64,000 bases of DNA from Vitrella brassicaformis CCMP3155 (GCA_001179505.1 CDMY01000291.1:1-64000), one strand, 5' to 3'. Shown: positions 3,507-34,738, numbered from the stretch's first letter. Numbers and translations are program-made. Notes: generated by a model from the sequence alone, not told the origin.

Positions 3507-6062
3507 TTACCCGGTGTCTCCCCACTTGACCTGATCCAGCAGGAGGATGTCGTAGACACGGCTCCTCAGGTCACGACTGACGCATCAAGGCAGCAAGGGA
3601 CAAACAGGCCGACAGGCAGAGGATAATGAATGGAGAGGCGTGGTGGCACTCGTCACTGCTTGTGCGTCGATGTATTGACCTGAAGTGGCTGTCCCATGTG
3701 ATCAGGTAGACGTCCTTGCGGTACACCTCGTTGGTTTTGATCTTGTCCAGTGCTGGCTCGAAGTCGCTGTCTCCCGCCACCAGAAAGATGACGTCCACCC
3801 GATCGTCACGCGCCTTATCCAACAGCTCCATGGTGATCTTGCAATCCGCGCCAGACTGCTGCCCATTGGGTTTCAGCCTGCATGCAAGATACGCCGTGAA
3901 CACCGCTCGTCATCCCGTCCGTCTGCTCGTTTGTGTGCATACCTGGATTCCCAGACGCCGAATCCCTCTGCTTTGAGGTCCTTGTGCAGCTGCTTTAGCG
4001 CCTCCCGCTCAGGGCCGAGACGCAGCTCCTTGTAATTGGTGCTGACATATAGCGAGTGATACGCGCTGACATCGTAAGCCCATTTCCGCCGCATCATCCC
4101 CACAAGCGACAGCACGTCACTCGTTCTCGGCTGGCGCCTGGTGTGCTCGGAGAACGTCTGGCAGAAGTAGGCCCCATCCACAATGAGCGCCGCCTTGCCT
4201 CTCAGAGCCACAGGCTCGGGCCTGATCAAGGAACGCCACACGTTAGCGTCAGGAGGGCTATGTGCTATGTTGTTCCGCTAGAATGGTCTCGCTCACGTGC
4301 TGGCCTGCGTCGGAAGCTGCATGGTGTAGGACGGAATGGCGACTGGCGGCGGAGTGGACACATTCGCTGACCTCTCACGATCACGAGCCCTGGTGCACAG
4401 AGGAATATACAAGGGGGAAGGATACAAGACGTGTATCGGCTGATCGGCTGATCTTTCGCATACAAGACTCACCTCCACGCTTCGAGCTCTTCCATGGTGT
4501 GGGCATTATGGCAGCTGTCTCCGTAGCGACAGCCACTTCCTGCACTCAGACACGCAAAACACGATGAACACAGCCACTTGTCTGTCTGTCTGTCTGTCTA
4601 GGTACCGTCAGGGTTGATGTATTTGCACATCGTCGCGTTGCCTCTGAGGTCCAGACGGCCATGTGCGAACGAACATGCGGCACCACGGGGGCAAACACCC
4701 TGACACGACCAGAAGCCAAAACGATCATTCTCACATTGGAGGAAACAAGACAATTGATGCCTCGTCACCTGTCGATCTGCTTCACATATTTTGGTCTTGT
4801 AGAAAGGCGCGTCAGGTCCGGTCGTCGGTCGAGGAGGGGGCGGCCTGTAGAAAGGCTGAAGGACAACAAACAGTGAGTGAGCCAATCACTGCCTCCTGTC
4901 GTCCATTCAACCCACCTTTAGGGCCGTGTGCGCAACCTGCTCGTCTTCGTTGTCTGAGGAGCCAGTGCTATCCCGCCGCATAAAATGCGCCAAGTGCTCT
5001 TGGGAGCTGGTGCCGTAGGTGGGCTGGGTGCGGCATAAAGCTGGGTTTGCGGAGACGGGAGAGCTGAAACGACACAACAGAGACGGAGAAAGGCGCCCCG
5101 TGAATGTGTGAACCGTTGCCCGTCTCTTGCCCTCTCACTTTGGCGTGTCTGGATACTGGGGATATACCGACGAAGCTGTAGTTGAGACCCAGCCCGGTGG
5201 CTTCGGCATTTGGGGCGCCGCAGACCTAACAGCACAAAAGGCATTCGAAACGCATGTCATCAATCGTTCATCTCTCGCCCTGCTCACGGTGTGGCATATT
5301 GCGGCGTCTGCAGAGTCAGATCTGAAGGCGCAGAAGTGCGGCTGCCCTCACGCTCATACGATCTGCACCGACGCAGTGCAAAAGCATCCAAATGAGCACG
5401 ATCAGAAGCGTCAGTGGCTGTGCCGTTACCTCCATGCTTCGAGCTCTTCCATGCTGTGGGCGTTGTGGCAGCTCTCCCCGTAGCGGCAACCACTCCCTGC
5501 ACTCGGGCACGCCCACCAGACACCAATGCCGACCCTCCACTCAGACGGTCTTCTCTTCCTGCTTACCATCTCTGTTGACCCACTCGCACATCTTGGCCCT
5601 CTTCCCTCGCAGCTCCACTCTGCCGTGCGCGTAGGTGCAGGCATCGCCTCGATTGCACCTCCCCTGAGCCAAGTGACAGAGATCAGCGGGATTTGAGATG
5701 AAAGAGTGTTTCGGTCGACCTACCCGGCGCCAGTGCTCGCAGAGCTCGACCTTGAAATTTGCCAGCTTGATCAGATCATCTGAGGAAATCAGAGAGGGAG
5801 GCACCCGTAAGTGACTGTTCCTATCTGAGTGGGATCTCATACCTCCTCCTGCCCGCCTCTCCTCCCGCAGGCCCGTCGACACGATCCAATGGCTGGTGCG
5901 ACGTGGTTGACACTTGGCGTGGGGTACGAATGTGCCCCGGTCGGCTGGAGGGAGAGGGATGCCGTTGCTGGGGGGTGGGTAAAGGGGCACCGGTGCAGGT
6001 GAGGGGGATGGTGTGTCTTCCCTGCCATATCCTGCGGCTGTCGGCGGGACGACGTCTGACAT
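3507..6062 (-). CDS. 4x CCCH zinc finger plus NYN (LabA/DUF88-type PIN) putative endoribonuclease, paralog 1
   Basis: Spliced fingers: FKVELCEHWRRGRCNRGDACTYAH, KMCEWVNRDGSGCRYGESCHNAH, YKTKICEADRQGVCPRGAACSFAH and TMCKYINPDGSGCRYGDSCHNAH. NYN motifs: ALIVDGAY, QSGADCKIT, IFLVAGDSDFEPAL, VYLITWD and SRDLRSRVYDILLLD. Stop TAA at 3507-3509. Confidence 0.85.
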
Positions 6063-6487
6063 CGGCGTTGCGACGTGTCAGATCTCACGGCAAAGAATAC
6101 GTTCTCTCAGATGCAGCCTTCAGAGCCTCACGCGTCGGCATTCCTGCCAAGAATTGGCATCTTATTGTGTTTAACGACACTCGCGTAACCCTTCCTTCGC
6201 AAACGCAGACATTCATGCACACAGCCTGTCATGGTCAGACGAGGGCTTCCGTGGAAGAGGATGCGAGAAGTAAGGTACCAAGAGGTGTTTTCAGTCCAGT
6301 GCAGCACTGTTTGCAGCCAAAGCAAACAGCCCATTGGCTCAAACAGCAACCTCTCTCTGAGAAAGACACCCTCATGATGACACAATAGCACAGACCACAA
6401 ATTGGCTCCCTTCAGTTCTGTCGATGCACAGCACGTCCCCAAGCAGTCAACAATTCGGCCCTAGCAACCAACAGATCCGCCGTCGAA

Positions 6488-7338
6488 TCACGAATCTGGT
6501 TGCACATGGTCAAGGAGGTAGTCTGCGACTTCGTGCTGGTATCTGCAGGACATACCATTCACAAGCCCATCAACTCGGCGCCCTGTGATTCCCCTCACTT
6601 GTCGAGTATGGTTCGACCGTTCTTGTGGAACCCTGCCAGCATCTTCCGGCACGTCGGCTCACCACAAAAGCACTCATCCATGGCCATGATGGCGTACTCC
6701 TGCAGGACACCAACAAATCGGGCAGTCACTTACGGGAAGATGGATGGATAGATGGATGTGCGTATACTCCTCACCGTCGTTTCGTAATCGAAGAATATCT
6801 GACACAGACAGATGACATGGAATCAGTGTACACACGCTGGTCAGCCAATCCATAGAACCGCTCTGTACCTGTTCGTCCTTGGAGATGTCCCGTCGCGCGA
6901 TGAACGTGTAGGCGCCATAGCTGTTGCGCTTCGCCCATGTGTTGGGCTCACACGAGTGGTTGAGGAATCGCCCAGGGGCGTACATGTCCGCATGCCTCGG
7001 CGGGACTTCAGATAACTGATGACACGCGCACACAGCACACACGCAGTCAGATAGGGAATGACCGATGAGCCCACATGTGCGTGTACCTGAATCGAGTGCA
7101 TTGTTCGTTTCTCATCGATGGTCTCAGCTACACCAACAAGTACCACGTCGCCTGTGGAGATGTGCTTTTTCGCGAACACGCCCCTCATCTGTCCTTCCTC
7201 TCCCCCATCGCCGTAGAATCTCTCCTCGCGCACCTCCACATGTGGGCTCAGGGCTGACGGGTCAGTGACGCCGGAAGCCGCGAGAGAAGAGTATGTGCCG
7301 TTGCCGGCAGGACTGGTGGCTGCAAGAGGAGAAGGCAT
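6488..7338 (-). CDS. Small SET plus post-SET domain protein (putative lysine methyltransferase); start uncertain
   Basis: RGVFAKKHISTGDVV, GRFLNHSCEPN, FIARRDISKDEQ and post-SET ECFCGEPTCR, spread across GT-AG exons. Confidence 0.85.
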
Positions 7339-8238
7339 GCTCGGGTTCAAAGTAGCACTGTATCACATCACATCAACACCAACATGAGAAAGAGGGAGGG
7401 AGGGAGAGAGAGAGAGAGAGAGAAGGGGCGTGTTTTCCGTCCGTCTGACTGATCTGACCTCTCGATGCCGAGTGGTGGTGCGAGGTCGACGGCATCGTCC
7501 GGTGTGGTGGGAGGGGAGGAGGCAGGGGAACCTGCATGACATCACGAACAGTCACAATCACACACCCACGAACACACCCGTACATCCATCCACTCCTCTC
7601 CCATCTCACCTTGCGTGGCGGATTATTTCTGACTCAGCCGCCGGAGATCAGCTGACGGAGATCGGAGATCTTGAGCACTTGTAGACGGTTGGTTGGTTGG
7701 TTGGTTGGCTGGTTGGTTATCGTGCCGCCGAAGCGCTGCGGTCGGTTATGGGTTTGACGAGACGCCTGTCCCTACCCCGAAATCGTTGGGGTTCGTTCAG
7801 CGGCAAACAGAAAGACGGGACTTGGATTCTAGCGTTGCGAAGCGTCATAAAAGCGTCTCCAAAAATCACCCCGATCTCTCTATCTCCGTTGAGCTCAGCA
7901 GGTCTAAAATGCCCTTGCTCCCATCACAGGAAAAAGGCTCAGGAGAAGCTTCAGCTGACACGAAGCCATGCATCAAGGGCAGCGCAGCCAAGGGGCAGCA
8001 CCCTCCCTCCCCCCTCTCTCCCTCACAGTTGCAGCTGATGCGAGGTGAGTCTCTCTCTTCTCAAAAATCGCAAGAACACGATGCACAGACACATCATCAC
8101 GAACACGAGAATGCTGCCCCACGCAACATCAAAAAAGTCTATGGCAAGGCAACCGATGGCCGAAACGGCCCTCAACCATAGCTGCATTTGCAGGCCACTC
8201 GCATCGTCCGCCGTACCCTCCCCCGACCCCCGCCACCT

Positions 8239-9596
8239 TCAAAGATCCCGTGACGCCTCCTTAACGGCGGACACAAACGCGCCCGCCGCCTCTGGGGTCA
8301 TGCCGGGCTGCATCCCGTGGCCCAGGTTGGCGATGTACCTCTTTTTGCCGAACTTCTTGACCATGGCGATCGTGTGCTTCCTGATGATCTCTGGGTCGGA
8401 GTACATGGCATGTGGGTCGAGGTTGCCCTGCAAGGTCAGCTTGTCGCCGAACCGCTGACGCATTTCGTGGGGATCTGCGCTCCAGCCGAGGGAGATGGCG
8501 TCGTAGGACGAGTCGGCGAAGGACGCAAGGGGCATCTCCTTCGGGAAGGCGATCAGGATGGCGTTGGACCGCGCCTTCTTGACCTCGTCGGCGATCATTC
8601 GCATGTACTTGGCTCCGAACTCCTCGTACATGTGCGGGGACAAGACACCTGACAGAAATGAAGACAGTGCAGGCAGATACTGAGCGAGAACGCACCCCAC
8701 CACAGCCCCTCCGTCGCTCTGCTTGTCGCACCTGCGTTGGTGTCGAAAACCTGAAGTAGCTGCGCGCCGGCATCATACTGCATGATGAGGTATTGCGCAC
8801 TGATCCTGGCGATGCCTTCCAGCAGCTTGTGACTGGCCTCCGGGTGGTCGTAGAGCCACCTCTTGGCCCCCTGCCAGTCCTTGCTGCTCTCGCCCTGCAC
8901 CATGTAGGCCATGATGGTCCACGGCGCGCCGCAGAAGCCGAAGACCGGGATCTCGTTGTCGAGCTTCTTCTTGGTCGTGTAGATGGCGTCGGCGACGTAG
9001 CCGAGGGTCTCCTCGACGTCAGGGTTAAAGTTGAGCTTCTCGAGGTCTGCGGGCTTCTCGAAGCCGTAATCGAACACTGGCCCCCTTCCCTTGATCATCT
9101 GCAGCGGCTGACCCATCGCCACGGGGATGACGAGAATGTCAGAGAAGATGATGACTGCGTCGAGAGGATAGCGGCGGTAAGGCTGCAGGGTAACCTCGGC
9201 CGCAAGCTCCGGATCTTGGCAGACCTTGAGGAAGTTGTGCTCGGCGACGAGCTCCCTGTACTCAGGCAGGTACCTCCCCGCTTGCCTCATCATCCACACC
9301 GGCACCTCATCAACCTCCTCGCCACGCGCAGCCCGCATGATCCTGTCATTCTTGGGCGTTGGCCACTCGCCCTTGTTGGCGCGTCGCTCAGCGCTGATCT
9401 CCTGCTTCCTCTCGGTGGAGGTTTCGGTCACGACTGCCTGCATGCAGAGGGGGCGGGCCAGACGAGAGCGCAGAGCCCGGCTGTTGGAAGATCTCAACCT
9501 CCTGAGGGGTGCTGACGACAGGAAGCCTGTGGAAGAGGCCTTCTGAGGGTGGAGGGCGAGAGAAGCCGCGACTGCTGCCAAGAGGATGATGGACAT
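8239..9596 (-). CDS. UROD: Uroporphyrinogen decarboxylase with bipartite plastid-targeting presequence; 2 exons, intron 8731-8649
   Basis: PVWMMRQAGRYLPEYR, DAVIIFSDILV, GFCGAPWT, LQGNLDP and YIANLGHGM. The N-terminus is a hydrophobic signal (MSIILLAAVAASLAL) followed by an S/R-rich transit peptide. Confidence 0.97.
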
Positions 9597-9659
9597 CGTT
9601 GGAACGGACATATATGCCGAGAAGATCTTTCCTCACAGCAGGGGTCTTTCCTCAGAGCA

Positions 9660-9684
9660 GCAGCGGTTTCATGGAGCACCCTAG
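9660..9684 (+). promoter_or_regulatory. Recurrent promoter motif, copy 1 (between head-to-head UROD and PH genes)
   Basis: gcagcggtttcatggagcaccctag, a 25/25 match to 30563-30587. The regulatory role is inferred from position. Confidence 0.6.
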
Positions 9685-9726
9685 AAAAATGCGAGCTAAG
9701 AGTCTTCGGATCTTCCGCCATTTGCA

Positions 9727-11355
9727 ATGGATTACGAGCAACAGGACCGTTCGTATCGCAGCCCGAACAAAGTGTACGTCGCGGCTCAACAGATGAGTAT
9801 GACCACTGGGTTGACGAGATGGATGAGTTGTATGTAGAGGAGAGACAGCAGGTATGCCTTGCATCAGAACACGTCAAGCGCAGTACTGCTTCTTTTCTTC
9901 CGGTCGCAGAGGCTGAGTGACCATGAACGGCGCCATAGGGCTGAGAGGCCAGCCGGTGAGCACCGAATTATCGATTTGTATGTGTCTTTCTTTCCTCTCT
10001 GTCTCAGGCGCTCCCTCGTCGAAGGCACACGAGAGCGCTTCAGCCGATGAGGACGCATTTCTCAGCTCGTTTGCACGAAAGAGAGCCAGCTTGTCTCCGA
10101 CCGCCCGTCTCGTGGACAAATCGTCATCGTCGCCCCTCGTTGCTGCGCTGACTCATGGCCGTGAGAGAGCAGATAGTGGGGAGATCGACTCGGGGACAGA
10201 CGACGGTGAACCCGATGTGCAAGAGGAACATGGCGAAGGCAGAGGGAGCGCACAGAGGCGAAGAGTAGGGAAGTTAAGAGAAGCACCATAAAAAAAAAGA
10301 GACACGGGCTTTTTTCTCCCTTCTCCTTTCGCAGCAACGAAGACACGAGCTCGAGCACCACCGTGTGCCGATCGACACCTCCCCTCTCAGGTCTGCCGCC
10401 AATCCTGTTTCATCGGCGGCGCGTGCTGATGCAGCCGTGATGGACGAAGATGACGATGAAGACGATGACGAAAGCTTGGAAAGTTATGGGAGAGGCATGG
10501 GTGATGTCTCGACGCCATTTGCACTGAAGCGGGCGGCGACAGCAGAGAAAAGGAAAACGGTAGGGTGGTGTCAAGGAAAAGACAAAAACACGAGGGGCGA
10601 TTCCTGGCTGCATTTGGACATGTTTGTGTCAGCGTGAAGGGTTGAGTTTTGGCGATGTGGCGGGAACGCAGATACAGAATATGGCTGGCGGGCAAACGCA
10701 GGAGTCAGACGAGCAGAAACGACCTGTCACCTTACGTAAGTCAATGCGTTGGATTCTCCCGCCCGTTTTCCTGCACATTCTGTGGGTCTTCAGTTCGCAG
10801 CGCCCAGCTGTTGTACGACACAGTGCTGGAGGACCATTTAGATAAGAGACACCGCAATGGCTTCATGTGGCAGAGCAGGTAGGCTTGATGGGCTTTCGGC
10901 GTGTCTGTATACACCAGAGGCGCTTTATTTCTATCCACGGTGCAGATGGGTGCGTGTGTGGAGCTTTGCCCTCCTATACTTCGGCGATCGAAAGGACACA
11001 GTCCCAAGTGGAGGTACTTCGTCCTGTCGGTCAGAAGGACACAGTCCTGTACCTCGTCTCCTGTCTCTGACAGTCCTGGACTTCAGAGAGCACAGCTGGA
11101 CCGTCACAGAAGACGAGCGCAACCCAAAAATCTTCAGGTCAGCCTCCATTGCAAAGTGTTCGATTCACCGGGACAACATCATGCTTTATGCGCGCGTTGT
11201 TCGCAAGGATGAGGGCAGAGGGCCAAAATCGTGAGTTCGTCTTTCGTGTGGGGCGTGAGTCGTCGACCGACCGCTCTACGTGGTTGAGGCATATCCGAAA
11301 CCAAATGGCGGCTGCCAAGACCGTCAAAGAAGTTGCCCAGTCACGAGGGCGGTGA
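9727..11355 (+). CDS. C-terminal PH domain protein with acidic low-complexity N-terminus; start uncertain
   Basis: Spliced LEDHLDKRHRNGFMWQSR-WVRVWSFALLYFGDRKDTVPSG-VLDFREHSWTVTEDERNPKIFR...REFVFRVGRESSTDRSTWLRHIRNQM fits the PH consensus, including the terminal Trp helix. Confidence 0.75.
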
Positions 11356-11720
11356 GGGCAGACAGCAAGATGGTCAGCCACATTGCAGAGGGAATGGAGA
11401 GGACTGAGTGAGTCGGTGAGGTGTCTGTCTGATTTGAGTCGTGATGCCTGCCTTCTGGGTCTGACAGTGTGACTGATCTTCTTGCTGCTCACGCAGCAGT
11501 GAGACTATGAACCTTGTTGAATTGTTTGTATGAGTTGTCAGTCCAAACCACAAACCCGATGGCGCTAGAAATGTGCTAGATGTACAGGATGCAATCGATA
11601 ACACTGCTCCCATTTCGCACTCGCTTCATCACACGCATCAAAACCACCCCTCAAAAACCCACTCTCGTCGGCCCCTTCTCTCCTCATGCAGCTCACGAGC
11701 GCCGACCAATCCTTGGTTAG

Positions 11721-12468
11721 TTACAGTACACCAGCAGCGTGCGTGTGACCGGAAACAGCCATCTGCGCGACTGGCCTCCATCGCGAGAGGTTGGCAGTCG
11801 GATGGCCGGACAGCTCGCCAAGAATGTCCGCCATCAAGTAACCAATACCAGCCATCAGCACAGCCGCACCTGAACCGCAATACAAACAAAGACAACGTCA
11901 CGTGCTCTCCGTCTGCTCATCCATCCCTCTGTCGTACCAGCAGCAGCAGGCATCTTCTGTATCATCCTCTGCGCGGTGTGTTGCGTCACTTCATTGGGGC
12001 TTGCATTCTGCATCACCGAGGAGCGGAGCTTAGCCACGTACGGCCCCACACTATCGCCAGCAGCCGCGAGTTGCTGACCACCCAGCAACACAGAAACAAG
12101 AAACGCAACAAACGTGAAGACGCCTGTTTGCCGTCTGCTGCTCGCGTGCCCCTGACCTTGTGAGTGCCATCGCAGTAGGGGAATTTCTTCGACTGCCAAC
12201 AACGACATATGACGATCTTTTTTTCGCCCTTGTCCGGAACGCGCTCAATCAACTGCACGAGGGGGACTCAAATGGGCACAAGTCATGTGCTTGTTGTGCT
12301 TCCATACATGCGAGTACTGGGGAAACTTGCGTGTATTGAAATCCATGACATCTCTGTATCTGAAAGGAGCCATACGCGATATCATGGCATCTTTGCGTGG
12401 TTTTTCTCCGTGTGACATCCTTACAGCAGATTCGTTGGATCCGGAGGCGGCCCAGAAGGCGAAGTCAT
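11721..12468 (-). CDS. CDGSH iron-sulfur domain protein (NEET/CISD family) with a C-terminal hydrophobic segment
   Basis: FNTRKFPQYSH-LIERVP...[34 protein letters not shown]. The last exon is GAAVLMAGIGYLMADILG...GVL*. Confidence 0.9.
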
Positions 12469-14078: not shown

Positions 14079-14820
14079 GGCCCGTACTCGGCCAAGCTGA
14101 GCCACCTTGATTCATTGATGTTCACAGAGCAAGAGAAAACAAACCTTTCATTCGCGCATACGTGTGGTGGTCTCATGCCGACCGATGACACACCCTAATG
14201 TCCAGAGAAACTCCGGCCGTGAAACGGTTGCGAAAGGGAAATATGAGCAATTTCCCCTGGCTTTCTTTTGGTGAAGGAAGCCAGAGGCCATTCAGCCCAT
14301 CAGGTCGCGCAGCTTTCTCTGCTTTACATGCTGCCAGGACAGCCAGCCCCCATCGTGTCTCACATTGCTGCTGGCCGGCCATTCAATCAGCCATTGAGTG
14401 GAATCCCACAGTGATGTTCAGTACGGAGTGAAATTCAGGGGCACCGGCAAGGCAGAGACAGCTCATCTACAGGTAAAGCTGCGCTGACAGGCGGTCCGAT
14501 ACGGCACAGAAATTTCCCTCTTTGCAGACCGCTGAGGTTAATTTGTTGGGGTGTGTGGTGTGCCCTCAGTGAAGTGTTTGTTGTCGGCTCGGTCTGCAGT
14601 GCCCTTTCGCACACACTGTGCATGGGCGCGACGAATACATTTCGGTCGACGGGAGACCATGCACCAAAGCCATTCATCGTATAAAAACGAAGAGGAGCCT
14701 GCAAGTCCGTGAGGGCAACCGGCGACAAACAACCGGCCTAATTCGTTCTTTCAGTCGCTTTCCGGCTGGATGATATGTACTTATGCACAGGGCAGTGTAC
14801 AAATGCATACAGAACCGTTA
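14079..14820 (+). repeat. ~740 bp dispersed repeat, copy 1; carries a CCCH exon relic
   Basis: Colinear and highly similar to 27677-28409. Its 14320-14515 part matches the reverse complement of 58385-58576. Positions 14570-14645 encode CRLGLQCPFAH with a 1-nt insertion upstream. Confidence 0.9.
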
Positions 14821-25844: not shown

Positions 25845-27602
25845 TCACCCATCATTACCGTACCCAAATCCGTGGGCCCGCCTGGCATCTGGGGATGCGA
25901 CATCTTGATAACTCGCCAGGGCTGAATTCGGAACTGATAAATGAATCGTTTCATAAGTCTGATTCCAACCAAACTGCCTGCCTTTCAGGAAGACGCTGCG
26001 CATGCAAATGTCTTTGATGACGGTGTTTCTTTGTTCGTCCAGCCCTCTCGCTAAAGAAGGGCTCTCCATGACCATCGATCGAAGGATTATATAGAGTCGC
26101 GTAGGCAAAATAGCGCATGATGGATGGATAAAACAATGTTTTATCTAGTGGCACTGGTGCTGCGCAGTCGCGTCACCTCTTCCACCAAGGCCTGGGAGGC
26201 ACAGTCGCCCACAATGTGGACAAGTGCGGCTGCAGCAGTAGCCTCACCTGGAGCTCCTGCACGGTGGCATCAATATGCCGGCTCCCGCCTGCTTCGTTGC
26301 TTTGGAAGGCTCTGTCGGACATCTCGAGCATCTGGAGGACCAACTTGCGCTGCAAAGCAAGAACGAACGAAAGGATGGCTCTGGGCATTGCTGTCTATCT
26401 TGCCCTTTCGCTTTGCAGGAATGCGATCTCACGATCCTTGGCTTCGAGCTCCTTCCTCGCGAAAGCCGAGTAGCACTGAAGTGACAGAGAGACACAGTGG
26501 TCAGTGCTGAGGAAGATCCTTGTTTTGACCTTGCCCCCCAATAAGGTGAAGAGCCTTTCCAGGACGGCCTGGTAGATGGCGAAACTGCTTGCAACCTTTT
26601 TGCTGCCATAGTCAAGCTGCAGAACGGACATGACGGCTTGGCATCCTGCATTTAGAGCGGACTTGCTTACCAGGGCAGGAACCGTCGGGAGGTGAGCTAT
26701 TGTATTTCCGACCAACTTGAGCCAACGCAAACCAACCTGTGCCGATGGACAAGAGACGAACATGTGAGACGACACATTCCTCTTGAGGTCTCTCACTTCA
26801 GCGGCTAGAAGGCCAGGCATGTTGCACAGGACGCACATGGAAAGGAAAATCGATTGTGAGTTCTCGCTTTTCGCAATCTCTCCCATCTTCGTCGACAGGA
26901 GGCCAGGACTTGGCATAATGCTGCTGATAACAGTCTCGCCGCACTCCCACAGGGTGAAGGTGAAGGCGTGGAGGTTCGTCTGGATCAGTTTGACGCAGCT
27001 TTGGTATGTGAGAGGGAGCGACAACTCATACAGATTCGGACCGCTCGGACTGCGAACACGGGGGCACGGAGACAGAAAGACAGGGAGGAAAATGCTGTGA
27101 ACTCAACAACTCTCACCTCTTGCTCATTTGGGTTGCTGCTTTCGTTTCAATTGCCTCTTCGCTGGTTGCTTTCGTCGCCACTGAGCAGCTGGAGACGCGC
27201 TTTGTGCATGGGGCATCTGACTCATACATAGGCACTCATCCCAGGCTGCACGTGGGTCCGTACATGCGACTGCTTACCGATGGACATTGAACTGTAGCTG
27301 GTTCCCTGACGATTCACGGTCCTTGCTTGAGTCGCTTGCGAGACACTCATCGAATCTTCATCTTCAATCATCAGCATTGGGGTTTCGTCCTTGAGTGCAA
27401 GAGGCTCTTCAGGCGGCTCAGCAATCCTGCGACAGATTTCCTCTGCCATTGACAGCAGGGGGCCTACCCACAGCCTTGATGCGGGCAGGTGTCTGCTTGT
27501 GCTCTTGAGGAAGGAGATGGTTCGGTGAGGGTTGAGGGGGAGGACGCGAGGCAACGTGGCATAAACCTTCAGCTCAAGAGGCTCCAGTCGAATTGTCAGC
27601 AT
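25845..27602 (-). CDS. Hypothetical multi-exon protein with a possible CS (p23/SGT1-like) domain start near the C-terminus
   Basis: Long coding-like exons at 27222-27602, 26395-27024, 26173-26388 and 25845-26108. FGWNQTYETIHLSVP resembles the CS lead-in W.Qt...v.i.vp. Confidence 0.45.
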
Positions 27603-27676
27603 GGTTCCTTTCCGAATCTGCTCCAAGCCTTGCAAGGCTGGGCAGCTCTCACCGGCCCCCACTTTCAAAATTAACT

Positions 27677-28409
27677 GGCCCGTATTCGGCCAGGCTGTCC
27701 CCCAGTCGATTCACATGGAAGGTTTCAGGGCCAAGAAGAAAACAAAGCTCTCATTCGCGCATACGTCTGGTGGTCTCATGCCGGCCAATCGAACACCGAA
27801 TGCGTCCGGGACGTAGCTCCGTGAAACGGTTGGAATTATGGCGGTGACGTTCATGGCTTTTCTTTAGCGCAGGAAAGCCAGAGGCCATTCAGCCCATCAG
27901 GTCGCGCATCTTTCTCTGCTTTACATGCTGCCAGAACAGCCAGCCCCCATCGTGTCTCACATTGCTGCTGGCCGGCCATTCAATCAGCCATTGAGTGGAA
28001 TCCCACAGTGATGTTGAGTACGGAGTGAAACTCAGGGGCACCGGCAAGGCAGAGACAGCTCATCTACAGGTAAAGCTGCGCTGACAGGCGGTCCGATACG
28101 GCACAGAAATTCCCCTTTTTGCAGACCGCTGAGGTTAATTTGTTGGGGTGTGGTGTGCCCTCAGTGAAGTGTTTTTGTCGGCTCGGTCTGCAGTGCCCTT
28201 TCGCACACACTGTACCTGGGCGCGAAGCATACATTACGGTCGACAGGAGACCATGCACCAATTCATCGTATAGAAACGAAGACGAGCCTGCAAGTCCGTG
28301 AGGGCAACCGGCGACAAACAAGCGGCCTAATTCGTTCTTTCAGTCGCTTTCCGGCTGGATAATATGTACTTATGCGCAGGGCAGTCTACAAATGCATACA
28401 GAACCGTTA
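27677..28409 (+). repeat. ~740 bp dispersed repeat, copy 2; carries an in-frame CCCH exon relic
   Basis: Colinear with 14079-14820. Positions 28165-28238 read KCFCRLGLQCPFAHTVPGREA after a splice-acceptor-like ccctcag. Confidence 0.9.
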
Positions 28410-28835
28410 CAAATACACACCCCAGGAGGTTACATGGCAAAATTCTGCCTCGAGCATGCTTTATGCAAAAGGCACGAGGGACATGGAAAACCGATATCTA
28501 ACTCTCTCTGATAAAACCAATATACAGACCCACATCCACTGATACACCTTCATAGCACGGCGGAAAACGCCTTTTTGTGGCTTGCAACGCCCTCTTTCAT
28601 CACATCTGGACAACACCCCACCCGTCCCTCTCCTTCCCCTTCTGTTTCTGTGGTTCATGAAAGCCGAACCTTCGACTGACACTCGCTTTGTTTTCTGGCG
28701 CCTGACACACGAATAATCCTGCTCGACTCGGAAATGGTATCTATCTGACCAGATGAACACAAAGCGTATGCATCGGAATGTTACTGCTCGATGGCCTCTG
28801 TTCACCTGGTTTGGCTTTGCTTGGATGTGGTAGGT

Positions 28836-29086
28836 TCAGTTGACTTGGTCCAGACACAGCCGCTCCACCACATGGGTTCCCAAGTGTTGGCTGCACAGCA
28901 CAGGGGAGGAAAGTTGGGACGACACATGCACTCGTGAAGTGCGTGTTGCTCTGCTTCCCCCCCTCTCACCTTGAGCTTGCCTCCCAAGTTAGCAAATAGA
29001 CCTCCTTGCGGTAAATCTCATTTCGCTTGATCTCTTCAAGCGCCGGGAGAAAGTCTCTGTCACCTAAACCACGCGCGCACACACAC

Positions 29087-29117
<31 letters not shown>

Positions 29118-30463
29118 GAGAGAGGTCACCAGCTAGAAGCACAATCGCGCTGATCTTGTCGTGTCTGGCCATCTTGAGCAACTGCACGTACAAAGAGATG
29201 TCACCACAGCGTAGGGCAATCTTTCTTTCTTACCTCGATGGTGATCTTGCAGTCTGCACCCGCCTGTGTCCCGTTCTCCTTCAAGCTGAACAACCAGCAC
29301 ATTCACATGACACACAAACGTGACGTTGCTCGGCCGTCGATGTGTTTCCTCACTCACTCTGCCTCCCACACTTCGAAGCACAACTCGTTCCGCAGGTGCT
29401 TGTGCAGCTGTCGGAGCGCCAGCTCCCTCTCCCTCGGCCGCAGATACCTGAAATGTTGATGTGCGTACATCAGTGGCCATGTGTTCCCTCCCCCTGCCCC
29501 CACCCCCGCAACCCAGCACGTTTTTCGCCTACTTGGGGTTGGTGCTGACGTACAGCGAGTGATACGTGGACACGCCAAACCCCCACCGCTCCTCAATGAG
29601 CCCGATGTAGCGCTCGATGTCTTTGATGCCCGGCAATGAGACGGACTTGAACGACTTGCACAAATACGCCCCATCGATGATGAGGGACGCATTGCCGCGC
29701 CAAGGCAACGCACGAGAGGGGCTCCCCGCCGAATCGAGGGCCGCTGGTACAGGACTACTCGTGATGGGAATCGACTGAGGCTGCGTGCTCTTCATGCTGA
29801 CGCACACACACACATCGATGTGACAGATATGCACGTGTTCGCGACACTGCGTGGTGCGTGGCTCACTCGACGGGCTGTAGTGTGGGCGTGGTGGCGTTGG
29901 AGCCGGCCCCAGTAGCACTAGCGCTGTAGGGCATGGGCTTGCCGTTGGCGCCACCTCTGCTCGACATACTGCTCGGACTATACGATCTGAACACACAGAG
30001 TCCTCATACGGCAGGTGAGCGTCAAGCTGCTCATCAGGGTGTGGTGTGCATCCTGTCCGCCTTACGCAGGCGTGGTGTCTTGTGGTTCCGTCGGAGTGTC
30101 GAACGTTGGTACTGCTGGCGGTGCGAATGCGTCCAAACTCTGCTGCGACCTGCAAGGTGAGATCACCAAACACCCACTTGAACGTGCGCGCCTTTTCCTG
30201 TCACGTGTGTGCCATTCGTTACCGCAATGCGTCGCGCTCCTGTGCAGTGTGCGCGAAAGGGCACTGTTGACCGAGCCGACAAAAGCCCTTCGCTGAAGCC
30301 CTCCACACACACAGCCCAAAAGAGTTGACCCGTGCAGCGGCCTGGCGTCGCTTTGCTTACCGATGTACTTGCACATAGTCGCCTTCTTGACCGGCCGCAT
30401 CCCCGCCCTTATCCCCAGTCCTCTTTCTGCCCGTTGCGTTGAGCCTATGGTGCCCGGCCTCAT
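28836..30463 (-). CDS. CCCH zinc finger plus NYN (LabA/DUF88-type) putative endoribonuclease, paralog 2
   Basis: KKATMCKYIAKGFCRLGQQCPFAH. NYN motifs: SLIIDGAY, YHSLYVSTN, QAGADCKITIE, IVLLAGD-RDFLPAL, EVYLLTWE and SQHLGTHVVERLCLDQVN*. Clearly paralogous to 3507-6062. Confidence 0.85.
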
Positions 30464-30562
30464 GGCTGCAAAAATCTACATCTACTCGCAGTGCTGCACA
30501 AGGTGTTGCTTTGTGCAGCAGTCCCTTTGCTTTTGCGACGGTCCCTCCTCTCAACCCTTTCT

Positions 30563-30587
30563 GCAGCGGTTTCATGGAGCACCCTAG
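30563..30587 (+). promoter_or_regulatory. Recurrent promoter motif, copy 3 (in the ~190 bp head-to-head gap between CCCH-NYN paralog 2 and the KH gene)
   Basis: gcagcggtttcatggagcaccctag, identical to 9660-9684. Confidence 0.6.
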
Positions 30588-30656
30588 GCGGTGCACTGCG
30601 AGCCTCCACGCGTCTCTGTTAAGGGAGGCGAGATACGCAGACTACAGATAGCAGGA

Positions 30657-33187
30657 ATGGCAGTACGGGTCAGGGTCGCCCTTGAAGGCAACTCAGAAAG
30701 CCTCAAGATGATGATGCTGGATCCTCAGTGGAGCGAGGAGGTGTGTAAGAGAAAGATTCTGGGGAAGCTGGGGATGCTGAAGGGAACGGACACCAAAGCC
30801 GATGATGCTATTGCAAGGTGAGAGCATCGCCATCGAAAAAGCACGAGAAAAAGAGCCTTCATCTTCGTCTGCGTGTGTGCTTCTGTGCAGATCTTCGGCA
30901 TTGCTTTGCAAAGGCGCAGAAATCGATGACCCGTCTGTGCTCCGTGAAGGTACGGCGCACGGAAAAGTTGTCCCGATTCTCTTTTTCAACTGCCTTGACT
31001 GTGTTCAGACGATGAACTGGTTGTTAAGATTGGCAACGCGGAGCCGCAAACATCACCATCATCCCGTGCGCGGGATGGCAAGAAACGCGAGCCATCTCCT
31101 GACTCGGACCTCTTCTCGGCAGTATGGGACAGATTTGCATCGCACCCGGGCAACGGGGCGCATACCTCTGACGTAAGCAGCACGCAACCCGCTTTGGATG
31201 GAGAAAGACTGTTTCGTGTGCTGTTCGACGAAGCCGACAATTCCGGAAGACCGACACAAGATTGACGTCAGTGTGCCCGTCGTGATGAAGGGCCCATCAA
31301 CTGTCTTGCCGGGCGTCCAATTGGCGAAGGAATACAGCTCCACACACGTAGGAGAGAAAGTAGGCTGCCAAACTGCTGTGCACTGCGGGTTCTTTCCTTT
31401 GCATTCATCTGTGCAGGTGCAGTCCCCTGCTAACAAGTCTGCTTCATGGAACGATGTTGCCGCGAGCTCACAAGGTACTGCAAAACAGACCGAGAAACAC
31501 CTGACTGTGCTTCGTGCGGTGTGGCATTTGCCCTCTCAGATAGTGGTACTCCGTCGTCTTCGAGACAGCAAGAGATCTGCACCTCGCAGAGCGGCTTCTG
31601 TCGTCTTGGCAACTCGTGTCCGATGAGAATCCGCCATGCTGACAAAATGTACGCAACACGAGACGCATGTAGACAGTTGTCACGATGAGTGCCCACAAGT
31701 GCTGCTCTCTTGTGTCCGTCAGGCCTCGCTCTGTGTCGCTGACTGATGGCCCCTCTGCCCCAGAAACGAGCACTGTGTACCAAGAGCTACGCGGCAAAGC
31801 ATACGGTGACAGATACGCAGACACATCTGCAAGGAACGATGTGTCTTGCGCGTGGGCCGCGACAGGTTTGGTGAGAGGCAAGAACGCTCAGAATCAGGAT
31901 CGAATCTCAGCCATCTTCAATGTCAAGCTGGAGATGACACCAGGTGGGCAATGCACACGCACCGGCATACCCATGCAGCTTCCCTTCCATCTGCATTCTT
32001 CTCCCTTGTGATGTGCAGGCGGCAACATCGAGGCTGGAAAGTACAGACTGAAAGGCACCAAGGAGAACATCGAACTCGCCCAGGTGAGTGAGGTGGGCAG
32101 CTTTCGAGGAAAGGAACAACAGTGAGTGCGGTGATGTGTTTTGTTGGGGCTGTCTGGGTGCCTTGCAGCGGTTCATCCATTGGTGGTGTCAGCTCGCCCA
32201 TCCCGCCGTGAAGGACGGCACACCGCAGTACACCCAAGCTGGTACACATACATATCATGTCCCTCCAATGCATTCAGGTCTGCTCAGATGTGCTTCGAAG
32301 TCGAGGTGATGTCGATGATCGAGTCCGTCCATCCTGGCTCCTATGACACGGGCGGGCATGACGTCGTAGCTCATGACGAAGGCGTTGCTGTGGAGTCGAT
32401 GCGCGTACCGGCGCATCATGCCAACACTCTGTTCGGTCCCGTGGGCAGTCGTCTGGCCAAGCTCAAGCGTGCGTCGGGGTGCATTCACGTCACGTGTATT
32501 GGCGGCGTAGCCGTCTTCATCGGTCAGTTGACACACAGGCAGACGCGCATTACCGCATAGCAAGTTGTTTGTTTGGTTTGTGCGTTCTGTTCAGGCTCCC
32601 GAGAAGAGCGGGTGCAAGCCAGGCTTTATCTCCAAGAGCAGAGTGACTTCCTCAGAGACCCAGCGGCATTCAAAGCTGATGGCAGAACGTGAGTGAAATG
32701 GAGAGGGAGGGGAACACGTGCACGGACATGAGCTTACTTGATCGGCTGCTGACTTCAGGTATGTCGAGGTTGTGGCCAGATCGCTGGCAACCTCTCAATT
32801 GCCCATCGAGAAGGACGAGCCGCTGCTCAGGCAGATCACAGCGATCGAAGCTGATACTTCAACGATGATCACATACCGCACCATGGAGTAGGCGACACCA
32901 ACATCTCAACGCACAAACGCAGCCTTCACGTATGCGGCTGCCTTGGCTTTGTGTGACCCAGACGGTGCGTCTTCTTCGTGATAGTGGGCCCCGAGGCTTT
33001 CAGTGCCAAGCAGCGTCTGCAGAAGCTTCTGGTGCAGACATTGGTCATGGGCTCTGTGAGCGCTCCCCCAGCCCCTCCGTTTCCTCCCCCTCGACTCGAG
33101 GCTCTTCGCTCTGCAACGAACACGGAAGAAGACAAGTCCCAGTCGCATGGCAGCGAGGAACACAAGCATCCACCGACCCATCGATGA
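30657..33187 (+). CDS. KHA/ubiquitin-like N-terminus plus variant CCCH plus 2-3 KH domains; possibly continuous with the downstream CCCH-NYN
   Basis: GAEIDDPSVLREDDELVVKIGNAEP (KHA/KCTD9-like); CTSQSGFCRLGNSCPMRIRH; GLVRGKNAQNQDRISAIFNVKL...YRLKGTKENIELAQ; VPAHHANTLFGPVGSRLAKLKRASGCIHV...FIGSREERVQARLYL; and a third degenerate KH-like segment. Confidence 0.7.
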
Positions 33188-33210
33188 ACTAACTGTCCGT
33201 GTGCATGCAG

Positions 33211-34738
33211 CGTGGATGCGCCTGACGCAGCAGCTGCATCGCCAGTCGGAAGCGCACTGAGCAAATCTACGAGACGAAAGTAAGACCGCAGATGGACAGA
33301 TGCGTGTGCATTTCGTCTTCTCTGTACCATTGTGTGCGCCGTGTTGTTGTGTGTGCGTAGGGACGTTGTCAAGAAGAAGAAGAAGCCGATTCCCTGCATC
33401 TATTACGCAAAAGGATACTGCAGGAACGGAGAGCTGTGCCGATTTGCCCACACCGTCACCCAGGCGAACAGCAAGGCCCAAGTCCCCAAGCCTCCCTTCA
33501 TCGACGACAAGGACCGTCAAAGGGCGGCCATGATCGTCGATGGCGCATGGGCAGCTCGGGCATTCAGGTCATCCAACGACCGCGCCATGACTCATGATGA
33601 TTTCGCCCGCATCATCGTGAGGAGGACGAAAGAAGAAGATCCGAACGCGGCTTTGTCTCTGCTTCACGTCTCTGTCTGTATGTCATCCTGACTTCGTCAG
33701 CGCGAGGCGGAGCTGTACCTGCCGCTCAACATCAAGAGAGAGCTGAGCAGCTACTTCAACGTTGATGCTGACGACTTCTTCCACGTACGCGTCAGCGATA
33801 CATGCATGAGGCTGGAAACCAATCTGTCGCTCTGTCTGTCTGTCCACGTTGTTTTCTGTCCTCTCAGAAGATACTCGGCGGTCTCCCGCCGGGCCTCTTG
33901 ATTCGCGATGGCTTGAAGAGCCTGCAAGAGGAGATTCCGAGAAAGAGTGGCATTCGTTTCGTCCAGTCCAAGTGAGCCCGTCACGATGCACCACACGCCC
34001 ATTTCATGCCACATCCTTTCCTTATCCCCTTCATCAGATTCAAGGAGCGACACGTGAGGTGTCCGTGCGGCCATGGGTTTCCGACGTTCGCGCAGAAGGG
34101 GACCGACATTTCGATCGCGCTCGAGATGATGAGCAAGGCCGCCAGCGAGAGCGTCGATGCCATCCTCTTTGTGGTAGGTGTCGTCCTCACGTGCGTGTGG
34201 GTGGGCACATTGCTGGTGGGGTGGGCTGAGTGTCACCATTCCTCGAGTGCTTCGTCCTTTGCAGGCGGGGGACATGGACTTTGCGCCAGTCATCGAGTTC
34301 GTGACCAAGCAGTTCAACAAGCCTGTGTATCTCATCGGGTGGGAGAAATGCCTCAGGTCAGTCACCCAGGCACTCTCATGACGCGCGACACTCTGCTCTC
34401 ATCTGTGCCCTCTGTGAGCCCCCCTCTGTGTGTGTGTGCATTCATATAGTTCTGACTTGTTGAAGCCGTGCGAGGGCTACCATTTCCTGCTGTCCAATGA
34501 CCTGCCTCTCCCAGCAAAGGCTGTATACCAGCAGAAGGCACCGGCGTCCCCCACCGCATCCCAGCCCACGGCGTCCGGCGAGAAAGCATCGTCACCTCTG
34601 TGCCAGCCAGGGGAGGCCAGTGCTTCCTCGCCGCGTTTGTCTGATGGGCCTGGCGGGGAGGAGGGTGGCGCTTCTGACGCCTCGCCCGAGGTGAGGGCTG
34701 GGAGCGTGGAGAGCTTGCCGAATTTGATAGATTTTTGA
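33211..34738 (+). CDS. CCCH zinc finger plus NYN (LabA/DUF88-type) putative endoribonuclease, paralog 3; no own start codon found
   Basis: PCIYYAKGYCRNGELCRFAH; AMIVDGAW; FKERHVRCPCGHGFPTFAQKGTDISIALEM; ILFV-AGDMDFAPVI; VYLIGWE; SSDLLKPCEGYHFL. The first visible exon begins at a splice acceptor (33210). Confidence 0.88.

What the first reader, a model, noticed from the sequence alone, without database searches (positions are those of the whole stretch)
3507..34738. Local family of three CCCH zinc finger plus LabA/DUF88-type NYN ribonucleases, all with intact catalytic aspartates
Seen in sequence: three spliced genes (3507-6062 -, 28836-30463 -, 33211-34738 +) pair CCCH fingers with a C-terminal NYN domain. 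All four PIN-type Asp are retained: (I/V)DGA(Y/W), GAD or GTD, and AGD(S/R/M)DF. Established: CCCH-plus-PIN pairing drives mRNA and viral RNA decay in Regnase-1, but Regnase uses a different PIN family (RNase_Zc3h12a). The best-known animal LabA/DUF88 NYN, MARF1, is paired with RRM/LOTUS domains instead. Inference: this looks like an independently assembled, locally expanded set of sequence-targeted endoribonucleases, i.e. a Regnase-like RNA decay or antiviral/anti-transposon system in a chromerid. This is the best candidate for an undescribed system in the window.
Basis: partly seen in the sequence, partly recalled or inferred. Interest (0 to 1): 0.85.

Follow-up and report, generated by a model that had tools for sequence, protein, structure and literature searches.

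The report
Three CCCH-finger NYN ribonuclease genes
Three transcribed genes of the alga Vitrella brassicaformis join RNA-binding CCCH zinc fingers to a MARF1/LabA-type NYN nuclease domain. This unstudied family was found here only in this species, probably cuts RNA, and in one gene a stop codon sits in front of the finger-nuclease part.

Summary
The core observation holds. The window is Vitrella brassicaformis CCMP3155 contig CDMY01000291.1. All three loci are spliced and transcribed, and are annotated as CEL99873.1, CEL99885.1 and CEL99886.1.

Each encodes CCCH finger(s) N-terminal to a PF01936 NYN domain. Predicted structures match LabA-like 2QIP and the MARF1 NYN domain (Z 15-17). There is no hit to the Regnase family PF11977.

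Two corrections:
- The four quoted Asp are present, but they are not the MARF1 tetrad. The Asp at the end of strand beta2 is probably Asn in genes 1 and 2.
- Gene 3 does not start at 33211. It is the 3' part of a transcript starting near 30596, whose 547-codon multi-KH ORF ends at an in-frame TGA (33184-33186). No ATG lies before the finger. The annotated 873-aa fusion needs a 75-nt weak-donor intron that no transcript assembly shows.

Sensitive searches found the family only in Vitrella, and the nearest outside NYN domains are bacterial LabA/DUF88 proteins. I found no paper on this architecture.

Best reading: RNA-binding-domain-guided Mg/Mn endoribonucleases, working like MARF1, DNE1 or Regnase. 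An antiviral or anti-transposon role is untested. This is a new variant of a known kind. Unchecked notes from this scan report further CCCH/KH-NYN genes elsewhere in the genome.

The parts
2811..6176 (-). Gene 1 transcription unit. It has 14 exons and CDS 6062..3507. Products are P0001 (545 aa) and CEL99873.1 (546 aa).
   Evidence: Transcript contigs L004/L005 map to the window at 100% identity in 14 blocks.
5430..5781 (-). Gene 1, first tandem CCCH pair (residues 87-138). Spacing is C-x7-C-x5-C-x3-H, 12 residues, then C-x9-C-x5-C-x3-H. The pair is spread over three exons.
   Evidence: Motif scan; Pfam zf-CCCH 4.1e-15 with 2 stretches; exons.
4472..4857 (-). Gene 1, second tandem CCCH pair (residues 274-324). 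Its second-finger exon 4540-4472 is 87% identical in DNA to exon 5497-5430.
   Evidence: zf-CCCH_UNK 31.9 bits against a cut-off of 31.1.
3507..4224 (-). Gene 1 NYN domain exons (residues ~370-545). Key residues are D379 (VDGAY), N426 at the end of strand beta2, D468 (GADCKI), and D493 and D495 (AGDSDF).
   Evidence: Pfam NYN 6.4e-10. AlphaFold2 model has pLDDT 82.6. Structural matches are Z 17.2 to 2QIP and 16.6/16.4 to MARF1. Residue positions.
28221..30556 (-). Gene 2 transcription unit. It has 11 exons and CDS 30463..28836. The last exon, 28747-28221, is 3' UTR. Products are P0005 (327 aa, CEL99885.1) and P0002.
   Evidence: Joints seen in four runs. Transcripts L001-L003 and L007.
30221..30390 (-). 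Gene 2 single CCCH finger (C-x7-C-x5-C-x3-H), split by intron 30294-30360.
   Evidence: Pfam zf-CCCH reaches only 16.7 bits (below the 20.5 cut-off), with Torus at 3e-5. The finger aligns with the second finger of gene 1's pairs.
28836..29796 (-). Gene 2 NYN domain exons. Motifs are IDGAY, GADCKI, and AGD|RDF, which is rebuilt by splicing across a (CTAT)n-rich intron at about 29065-29124.
   Evidence: NYN 2.1e-9.
30596..34965 (+). Gene 3 transcription unit. It has 20 exons and lies head-to-head with gene 2.
   Evidence: Logan contigs. MMETSP contigs L008/L009 mapped to the window.
30657..33186 (+). Gene 3 upstream ORF of 547 codons: a multi-KH RNA-binding module ending at the TGA.
   Evidence: Translation of L009. 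Pfam KH_1 at 22.1 bits (cut-off 21.5) and a weak KH_N4BP1_1st hit. The Atlas structure matches multi-KH proteins at TM 0.50-0.53.
33184..33186 (+). In-frame TGA between the KH ORF and the CCCH-NYN ORF. It is retained in every transcript assembly seen.
   Evidence: MMETSP's own ORF call, P0039, starts only at the Met just before VDGAW.
33136..33210 (+). A 75-nt in-frame intron used only by the genome annotation to make the 873-aa fusion protein CEL99886.1. Its donor is weak.
   Evidence: P0038 equals the transcript translation for 530 residues and then skips 25 codons. The donor scores -0.8, against 4.6-11.2 for confirmed introns. P0038 has no transcriptome source.
33187..34738 (+). Gene 3 CCCH-NYN ORF of 350 codons over 7 exons. 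The CCCH finger is at 33395-33451. NYN motifs are VDGAW, VDADD at the end of strand beta2, GTDISI and AGDMDF. No in-frame ATG lies before the finger.
   Evidence: Pfam hits. AlphaFold2 model has pLDDT 77. Structural matches are Z 15.9 to 2QIP and 15.6 to MARF1.
30557..30595 (.). Gap of at most ~40 bp between the assembled 5' ends of genes 2 and 3. It is probably a shared bidirectional promoter.
   Evidence: Contig ends. Contig ends are not mapped transcription start sites.

Best explanation
What is shown:
- These are three real, expressed nuclear genes of Vitrella brassicaformis.
- They belong to one Vitrella-restricted paralogue family.
- N-terminal CCCH zinc fingers (four in gene 1, one each in genes 2 and 3) are followed by a C-terminal LabA/MARF1-type NYN (PF01936) nuclease domain.
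- The single fingers of genes 2 and 3 align with the second finger of gene 1's tandem pairs. The finger-nuclease fusion therefore predates the duplications.

What is inferred:
- The fingers bind single-stranded RNA motifs and hold the exposed NYN active site on the bound transcript.
- The active site comprises the beta1 Asp, the alpha3 Asp and the two Asp of GDxDF.
- The domain then cuts endonucleolytically with Mg2+ or Mn2+, and the fragments go to general decay.
- The proteins would thus be guided mRNA-decay factors. They would work like MARF1 (NYN+RRM+LOTUS), plant DNE1 (NYN+OST-HTH) or Regnase-1 (Zc3h12a-PIN+CCCH), but were assembled independently from a different nuclease branch.

Gene 3 is a special case:
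- Its CCCH-NYN ORF follows a 547-codon multi-KH ORF on the same mRNA, after one in-frame TGA.
- The main mRNA therefore yields a KH-only protein.
- A KH-CCCH-NYN protein would need a minor 75-nt splice or stop-codon readthrough.
For: Expression and splicing:
- Canonical joints appear in four runs from three studies.
- Full ORFs lie on MMETSP, JGI and Logan transcripts.

Domains:
- Pfam NYN is above its cut-off in all three genes, and zf-CCCH is above its cut-off in genes 1 and 3.
- A family profile hits 2QIP at 2.1e-8.
- AlphaFold2 models have pTM 0.80 and 0.78.
- Z scores are 17.2/16.6/16.4 and 15.9/15.6/14.9 to 2QIP and the MARF1 NYN domain, well above the next fold at about 10.5.
- Foldseek agrees, and the ESM Atlas gives TM 0.72 to bacterial NYN clusters.

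Active site:
- The beta1, alpha3 and GDxDF Asp are invariant in all four Vitrella paralogues.

Precedent:
- The MARF1 NYN domain cuts ssRNA with Mg/Mn and needs its RNA-binding domains (PMC6217404).
- A bacterial NYN is a Mn-dependent ssRNase (bioRxiv 2024.04.08.588522).
- LK-nuclease fusions to RNA-binding domains have been proposed as stand-alone RNA-degradation systems (PMC2848206; PMC5499597).

Common origin of the fusion:
- The ATMCKYI lead-in is shared by gene 1's fourth finger and gene 2's finger.
Against: - No enzymatic or RNA-binding data exist for any family member.
- In genes 1 and 2 the residue at the end of strand beta2 is probably Asn. Its MARF1 equivalent, D215, abolishes activity when mutated. 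The equivalence rests on sequence alignment and model secondary structure, not on a residue-level superposition.
- The conserved Asn of the D-x-x-N motif is Tyr or Trp here.
- The Pfam NYN model matches only the C-terminal two thirds of the domain.
- For gene 3 no assembly supports translation of the CCCH-NYN part.
- RNA targets, cellular location and biological role are unknown.
Confidence: 0.6

Rival explanations
1. The proteins are pseudo-nucleases. The NYN domain in genes 1 and 2 has lost catalysis and serves only as an RNA- or protein-binding module. The proteins would then act as CCCH RNA-binding regulators that recruit other decay or translation factors, as TTP does.
For: The beta2-end acidic residue is Asn in genes 1 and 2, and the D-x-x-N Asn is Tyr or Trp. 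Each of the four MARF1 Asp is individually essential in vitro. Matelska et al. list 1-5 acidic residues and variable activity status for the LabA-like cluster.
Against: Four acidic residues (beta1 D, alpha3 D, GDxDF) are invariant across paralogues that are only 25-50% identical, which suggests selection on the site. The LabA-like structure 2QIP also lacks Asp at the aligned beta2 position, where it has Gln. That position is therefore not universal in this branch.
Confidence: 0.2
2. This is the first reader's reading: a dedicated antiviral or anti-transposon RNA-restriction system, a Regnase/ZAP-KHNYN analogue that has expanded locally under an arms race.
For: The architecture parallels Regnase-1 and KHNYN/N4BP1, which restrict viral RNA (papers listed). 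PADLOC models 'LabA-like NYN' and HEC-09 match the NYN domains, with P0006 at 2e-11. Several NYN fusions are noted elsewhere in the genome (unchecked).
Against: The PADLOC hits show domain homology only. The paralogues are old (25-50% identity), not recent tandem copies. No relatives were found in viral or metagenome contigs. There are no infection or transposon expression data. MARF1, DNE1 and Regnase also act on ordinary cellular mRNAs.
Confidence: 0.12
3. For gene 3 only: the CCCH-NYN part is a recently disabled 3' remnant. An ancestral KH-CCCH-NYN gene acquired a nonsense mutation, and the annotated 873-aa protein is a gene-prediction artefact that splices around the stop.
For: The TGA is retained in the genome, in two JGI/MMETSP assemblies, in MMETSP's own ORF call and in four Logan runs. 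The annotated intron has a poor donor. No in-frame ATG lies before the finger.
Against: The downstream ORF is open for 350 codons across six correctly spliced introns. It scores well for CCCH and NYN, folds confidently, and even keeps acidic residues at the beta2 end. Any inactivation would therefore be very recent. Contig assemblies drop rare isoforms, so they cannot exclude a minor spliced form (notes).
Confidence: 0.35

Closest known systems
MARF1 / limkain b1 (animals) and DNE1 (Arabidopsis): PF01936 NYN ('LK-nuclease') endoribonucleases guided by RRM and LOTUS/OST-HTH domains
   Same: Same nuclease fold and Pfam family (Z 15-17 to 5YAA/6FDL). Same logic of a NYN domain joined to RNA-binding domains. 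Three of the four catalytic Asp positions are kept, and probably all four in gene 3.
   Different: The RNA-binding module is CCCH fingers placed N-terminal to the nuclease, and no RRM or OST-HTH hit was found. The family profile does not reach MARF1 by sequence (E>10) but does reach bacterial 2QIP. The beta2 Asp is Asn in genes 1 and 2.
Bacterial LabA/DUF88 (COG1432) NYN proteins, e.g. VPA0982 (PDB 2QIP), and NYN+OST-HTH proteins
   Same: Closest in sequence and structure: 2QIP at 2.1e-8 and Z 17.2. Bacterial NYN+OST-HTH proteins are the best non-Vitrella hits. The GDxDF motif is shared.
   Different: The Vitrella genes are eukaryotic, intron-rich and fused to CCCH fingers. The N-terminal half of the domain is so divergent that an exhaustive HMMER scan found only Vitrella proteins.
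Regnase-1/ZC3H12A family (PF11977 PIN-like nuclease followed by one CCCH finger)
   Same: Works alike in outline: a metal-dependent PIN-superfamily endonuclease plus a CCCH finger on one chain.
   Different: A different nuclease branch. Matelska et al. group PF11977 with PRORP, and no PF11977 hit was found here. The domain order is opposite, and gene 1 has four fingers.
KHNYN / N4BP1 (two KH domains plus a Zc3h12a-type NYN)
   Same: The gene 3 locus has a multi-KH module upstream of a NYN nuclease, with a weak match to the first KH domain of N4BP1 (E 0.019, below the cut-off).
   Different: The nuclease is LabA-type. A CCCH finger lies between the two modules, and an in-frame stop separates the KH and nuclease ORFs in all transcripts seen.
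TTP/ZFP36 and Unkempt tandem CCCH RNA-binding modules
   Same: Gene 1's two finger pairs have (F)YK(T)x(L/I)C-like lead-ins and a tandem arrangement. Pfam zf-CCCH_UNK is just above its cut-off.
   Different: The spacing is C-x7 ... 12 residues ... C-x9, not C-x8 ... 18 residues ... C-x8 (the TTP spacing is from general knowledge; the spacing here is). TTP recruits deadenylases and has no nuclease of its own.

Membership tests
NYN domain, Pfam PF01936 (LabA/DUF88, LK-nuclease) | Sequence match to the family model above the curated cut-off | tested here: met
   Scores are 40.2, 38.5 and 42.2 bits for genes 1-3 against a cut-off of 24.2. Only model positions ~43-144 are matched.
NYN domain, Pfam PF01936 (LabA/DUF88, LK-nuclease) | PIN-like alpha/beta fold of the NYN type | tested here: met
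   AlphaFold2 models have pTM 0.80 and 0.78. Z is 17.2/16.6/16.4 and 15.9/15.6/14.9 to 2QIP, 6FDL and 5YAA, and the next fold scores about 10.5.
NYN domain, Pfam PF01936 (LabA/DUF88, LK-nuclease) | Four conserved acidic residues as in MARF1 (end of beta1, end of beta2, start of alpha3, end of beta4) | tested here: inconclusive
   The beta1, alpha3 and beta4 Asp are present in all genes, plus a second Asp in GDxDF. The beta2-end residue is Asn in genes 1 and 2, Asp in CEM09120.1, and VDADD in gene 3. These equivalences come from alignment and model secondary structure, with no residue-level superposition.
NYN domain, Pfam PF01936 (LabA/DUF88, LK-nuclease) | Mg2+/Mn2+-dependent ssRNA cleavage | not testable with these tools
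   Needs a biochemical assay.
MARF1 / DNE1 subfamily | LOTUS/OST-HTH (and RRM) domains next to the NYN domain | tested here: not met
   No OST-HTH or RRM hit at E<=0.1. The family profile does not hit MARF1 chains at E<=10.
Regnase / ZC3H12A family | RNase_Zc3h12a (PF11977) nuclease domain followed by a CCCH finger | tested here: not met
   No PF11977 hit. The fingers precede the nuclease.
KHNYN / N4BP1 family | N-terminal KH pair joined to a Zc3h12a-type NYN domain in one protein | tested here: not met
   KH_1 is just above its cut-off and KH_N4BP1_1st is below it. The nuclease is PF01936-type. In all transcripts seen, the KH and NYN ORFs are separated by a TGA.
CCCH (C3H1) zinc finger, PF00642 | C-x(6-10)-C-x5-C-x3-H motif with a Pfam match above the cut-off | tested here: met
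   Gene 1 scores 55.7 bits and gene 3 scores 31.0 bits against a cut-off of 20.5. Gene 2 has the exact motif but only 16.7 bits.
TTP-type tandem zinc finger | Two C-x8-C-x5-C-x3-H fingers 18 residues apart (definition from general knowledge) | tested here: not met
   Gene 1's pairs are C-x7 and C-x9 fingers 12 residues apart.

The most novel reading that the evidence does not exclude
Gene 3 may be a gated nuclease. The default mRNA makes only a multi-KH RNA-binding protein, because a 75-nt stop-containing segment is retained. Regulated removal of that segment, or TGA readthrough, would extend the same chain with a CCCH finger and a LabA-type NYN nuclease, turning an RNA binder into an RNA cutter. 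Together with genes 1 and 2 and the other CCCH/KH-NYN genes noted in this genome, this would be a chromerid-specific toolkit of guided RNases. It would have been built independently of Regnase, KHNYN and MARF1.
Probability: 0.15. Interest if true: 0.65.

Novelty: new variant of a known kind. Interest (0 to 1): 0.42.

Why it matters
Guided PIN/NYN endonucleases such as Regnase-1, KHNYN with ZAP, MARF1 and DNE1 are central to mRNA surveillance, germline transposon control and antiviral defence in animals and plants. Almost nothing is known about such factors in alveolates, the group that includes the apicomplexan parasites.

This family shows that a chromerid built the same kind of machine from different parts, joining CCCH fingers to a LabA-type NYN domain. 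It offers small proteins (306-545 aa) suitable for asking how finger specificity is coupled to cleavage.

If the beta2 Asn variants are active, the definition of the NYN catalytic set would need to be widened. The stop-interrupted KH/CCCH-NYN gene is a concrete test case for splice- or readthrough-controlled nuclease activity.

If the proteins turn out to be inactive, or the architecture turns out to be common elsewhere, this is just another uncharacterised RNA-binding family.

Tried and rejected
- Building the upstream exons of gene 3 by dynamic programming over GT..AG sites gave hundreds of solutions and a wrong best path. I replaced it with direct mapping of transcripts L008/L009.
- An exact-pattern scan of metagenome contigs with a gene 3 exon found nothing.
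- The word-indexed protein searches with the gene 1 NYN region and with alignment A1 returned only the query itself. They missed even known paralogues, so their blanks say little.
- The search for related loci with A2 failed for lack of conserved columns. With A3 it found no relatives in metagenome or viral contigs.
- One Pfam call on exon pieces failed because of a wrong frame.
- ESM Atlas feature searches gave only sub-threshold leads, a fungal NYN cluster at 0.80-0.81.
- Literature searches found nothing for PF01936 together with zf-CCCH, for DUF7923, for Vitrella together with NYN, or for NYN in alveolates.
- I considered and rejected organellar RNA processing, as for the Arabidopsis mitochondrial NYN proteins, because by eye no N-terminal signal or transit-like extension is visible in P0001 or P0005. 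This is inference only.
- I considered selenocysteine or a variant genetic code for the TGA. I gave it no weight, because nothing here points to it and I did not test it.

Full report
**Source and gene identities**

Exact look-ups place the proteins in Vitrella brassicaformis CCMP3155, contig CDMY01000291.1 (132,039 bp). Window coordinates equal contig coordinates. The window has 55.9% G+C and one 300-N gap.

The three loci are annotated genes:
- Gene 1 is CEL99873.1 (UniProt A0A0G4EQW7).
- Gene 2 is CEL99885.1 (A0A0G4EQH1).
- Gene 3 is CEL99886.1 (A0A0G4ER08).

All three carry only automatic names such as 'C3H1-type domain-containing protein'.

**Check of the observation**

A six-frame motif scan found CCCH patterns and the (I/V)DGA(Y/W) and AGDxDF motifs only at the three stated loci, plus one CCCH-like copy at 28149-28208.

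Laying contigs of four public runs on 28800-34790 gave canonical GT..AG joints for every intron of genes 2 and 3, so both are transcribed and spliced.

An exhaustive HMMER scan with a gene 1 exon returned full-length products. Their transcript contigs could then be fetched and mapped back to the window.

Gene 1:
- It has 14 exons (2811-6176, minus strand; CDS 6062-3507).
- It encodes 545/546 aa with four CCCH fingers in two tandem pairs and a C-terminal NYN domain.

Gene 2:
- It has 11 exons (28221-30556, minus strand; CDS 30463-28836).
- It encodes 327 aa with one finger and a NYN domain.
- Its AGD|RDF motif is rebuilt by splicing across a (CTAT)n-rich intron.

In genes 1 and 2 the CCCH and NYN exons are therefore joined in one complete ORF on real transcripts.

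**Gene 3 differs from the description**

- The transcript starts near 30596, not at 33211.
- It first encodes a 547-codon ORF (30657-33183). Residues 225-500 of that ORF form a multi-KH module. Pfam KH_1 scores 22.1 bits against a cut-off of 21.5, and there is a weak hit to the first KH of N4BP1. The Atlas structure matches multi-KH proteins at TM 0.50-0.53.
- That ORF ends at a TGA (33184-33186).
- In the same frame, 350 further codons encode a CCCH finger and a NYN domain (P0006; NYN 1.5e-10, zf-CCCH 2.3e-7).
- There is no in-frame ATG between the TGA and the finger. The first Met lies two residues before the catalytic VDGAW.
- The annotated 873-aa protein equals the transcript translation for 530 residues and then skips exactly 25 codons, including the TGA. 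This corresponds to an intron at 33136-33210.
- The donor of that intron scores -0.8 on a matrix built from confirmed introns, whose donors score 4.6-11.2.
- The TGA-containing form is the one present in the genome, in two JGI/MMETSP assemblies, in MMETSP's own ORF call (263 aa, starting at that Met) and in the contigs of four Logan runs. The 873-aa protein has no transcriptome source.
- 33211 is simply the acceptor of this unsupported intron.
- Contig assemblies drop rare isoforms, so a minor spliced form cannot be excluded.

**Identity of the nuclease domain**

- Pfam NYN (PF01936) is above its cut-off in all three genes. No hit to RNase_Zc3h12a (PF11977), OST-HTH or RRM appeared.
- A profile of the family hits the LabA-like structure 2QIP at 2.1e-8, but hits no MARF1 chain.
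- AlphaFold2 models of the gene 1 and gene 3 domains have pLDDT 82.6 and 77.0 and pTM 0.80 and 0.78.
- These models align to 2QIP and to the human and mouse MARF1 NYN domains with Z 17.2/16.6/16.4 and 15.9/14.9/15.6. FEN-like folds follow at about 10.5.
- The ESM Atlas gives TM 0.72 to bacterial NYN clusters.

The fold assignment is secure. Within the family, the domain lies closer to the LabA/COG1432 branch than to the MARF1 branch.

**Catalytic residues**

In mouse MARF1, D178 (end of beta1), D215 (end of beta2), D246 (start of alpha3) and D272 (end of beta4) are each essential for activity (PMC6217404).

| MARF1 position | Gene 1 residue | Status in the family |
|---|---|---|
| D178 | D379 | Invariant in the four Vitrella paralogues |
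| D246 | D468 | Invariant in the four Vitrella paralogues |
| D272 | D493 | Invariant in the four Vitrella paralogues |
| none (second Asp of GDxDF) | D495 | Invariant in the four Vitrella paralogues |
| D215 | N426 (probable equivalent) | Asn in genes 1 and 2, Asp in CEM09120.1, VDADD in gene 3 |

In 2QIP the aligned residue at that position is Gln.

Activity in genes 1 and 2 is plausible and unproven. The D215 equivalence is inferred from alignment and secondary structure, because the tools gave no residue-level superposition.

**Family and distribution**

- NYN identity is about 50% between genes 1 and 2, about 40% to the NYN-only paralogue CEM09120.1 on another contig, and 25-28% to gene 3.
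- The single fingers of genes 2 and 3 align with the second finger of gene 1's pairs, and gene 1 and gene 2 share the ATMCKYI lead-in. The CCCH-NYN fusion is therefore ancestral to the family.
- An exhaustive HMMER scan of 1.84 billion representatives with the N-terminal half of the gene 1 domain found only three proteins, all from Vitrella.
- A profile search found gene 3 and then only bacterial NYN+OST-HTH (LabA/DUF88) proteins near E 1e-4. It found no other CCCH+NYN protein.
- Pattern-based scans of metagenome and viral contigs found no relatives.
- Limits: the exhaustive scan used only half of the domain, and the other searches are word- or pattern-limited. Distant CCCH+NYN proteins elsewhere are therefore not excluded.
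- Unchecked notes from this scan report further CCCH-KH-NYN and KH-NYN genes on other Vitrella contigs. If these are right, the three genes are part of a genome-wide repertoire and not a local expansion.

**Mechanism**

Shown: expression, domain architecture, fold, and conserved acidic residues.

Inferred from the families named above:
- CCCH fingers bind single-stranded RNA.
- The NYN domain cleaves it with Mg2+ or Mn2+, as shown for MARF1 and for a bacterial NYN.
- The literature already predicts that LK-nuclease fusions to RNA-binding domains form self-contained RNA-degradation systems (PMC2848206; PMC5499597). Those papers list OST-HTH, RRM, S1 and Zn-knuckle partners for the nuclease, but not CCCH.

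The proteins thus probably work like MARF1, DNE1 or Regnase, while belonging neither to the Regnase family nor to the MARF1 subfamily.

An antiviral or anti-transposon role rests only on analogy and on domain-level matches to LabA-like NYN models in a bacterial defence library.

**Unexplained**

The gene 3 TGA lies upstream of six exon junctions. In animals and plants that position would usually mark an mRNA for nonsense-mediated decay (general knowledge). Yet this is the form that all assemblies recover, and the downstream ORF is fully intact. The possible explanations are that the stop is very recent, that it is bypassed, or that this kind of decay is weak in this organism.

**Verdict**

The three genes are real, expressed and correctly recognised as CCCH plus LabA-type NYN proteins. 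The architecture is undescribed in the literature I could search and was found here only in Vitrella. Its logic is that of known guided NYN/PIN RNases, so I class it as a new variant of a known kind, of moderate interest. The stop-interrupted KH/CCCH-NYN gene is the most unusual element.

Noticed in passing
window 27677-28409, 14079-14820, 58379-58581, 2304-2378: A dispersed repeat of about 740 bp, with the two long copies 88% identical. It carries at 28148-28230 an inverted, 82%-identical copy of gene 2's CCCH exon plus flank (30227-30308). Gene 2's 3' UTR exon (28747-28221) ends inside this repeat copy. Scan note s1-201972 reports the same repeat.
   Followed up: partly
window 30557-30595: Genes 2 and 3 lie head-to-head. 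Only about 40 bp separates the 5' ends of their assembled transcripts, which suggests a shared bidirectional promoter for two paralogues.
   Followed up: no
window 5430-5497 and 4472-4540: Within gene 1, the two exons that encode the second finger of each tandem pair are 87% identical in DNA, while the neighbouring finger exons show no DNA match. This points to an internal duplication with gene conversion or strong constraint.
   Followed up: no
window 3507-3511: Gene 1 has two 3' forms. Transcripts L004/L005 read GDTG then a stop (545 aa). The annotated protein and a second MMETSP transcript end GDTGQ (546 aa). A GTAAG donor sits exactly at the stop, so this looks like an optional terminal intron.
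   Followed up: partly
window 31540-31648 (gene 3 upstream ORF): The KH ORF contains a degenerate finger-like motif, C-x6-C-x5-C-x5-H. Its core GFCRLG..CP resembles the core of gene 2's finger.
   Followed up: no
L008 versus L009, near window 32166-32523: The two MMETSP assemblies of gene 3 differ by 2 nt. L009 has one upstream ORF of 563 codons, whereas L008 splits it into ORFs of 356 and 218 codons. This may be an alternative splice site near 32227/32278 or an assembly difference.
   Followed up: no
window 28748-28805: Gene 2 has an intron in its 3' UTR, about 30 nt downstream of the stop codon.
   Followed up: no
window 35126-36450 (+): The neighbouring annotated gene encodes a mitochondrial carrier (Mito_carr). 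The other neighbours have no Pfam hit or only DUF8274. Nothing suggests a functional link to the NYN genes.
   Followed up: no
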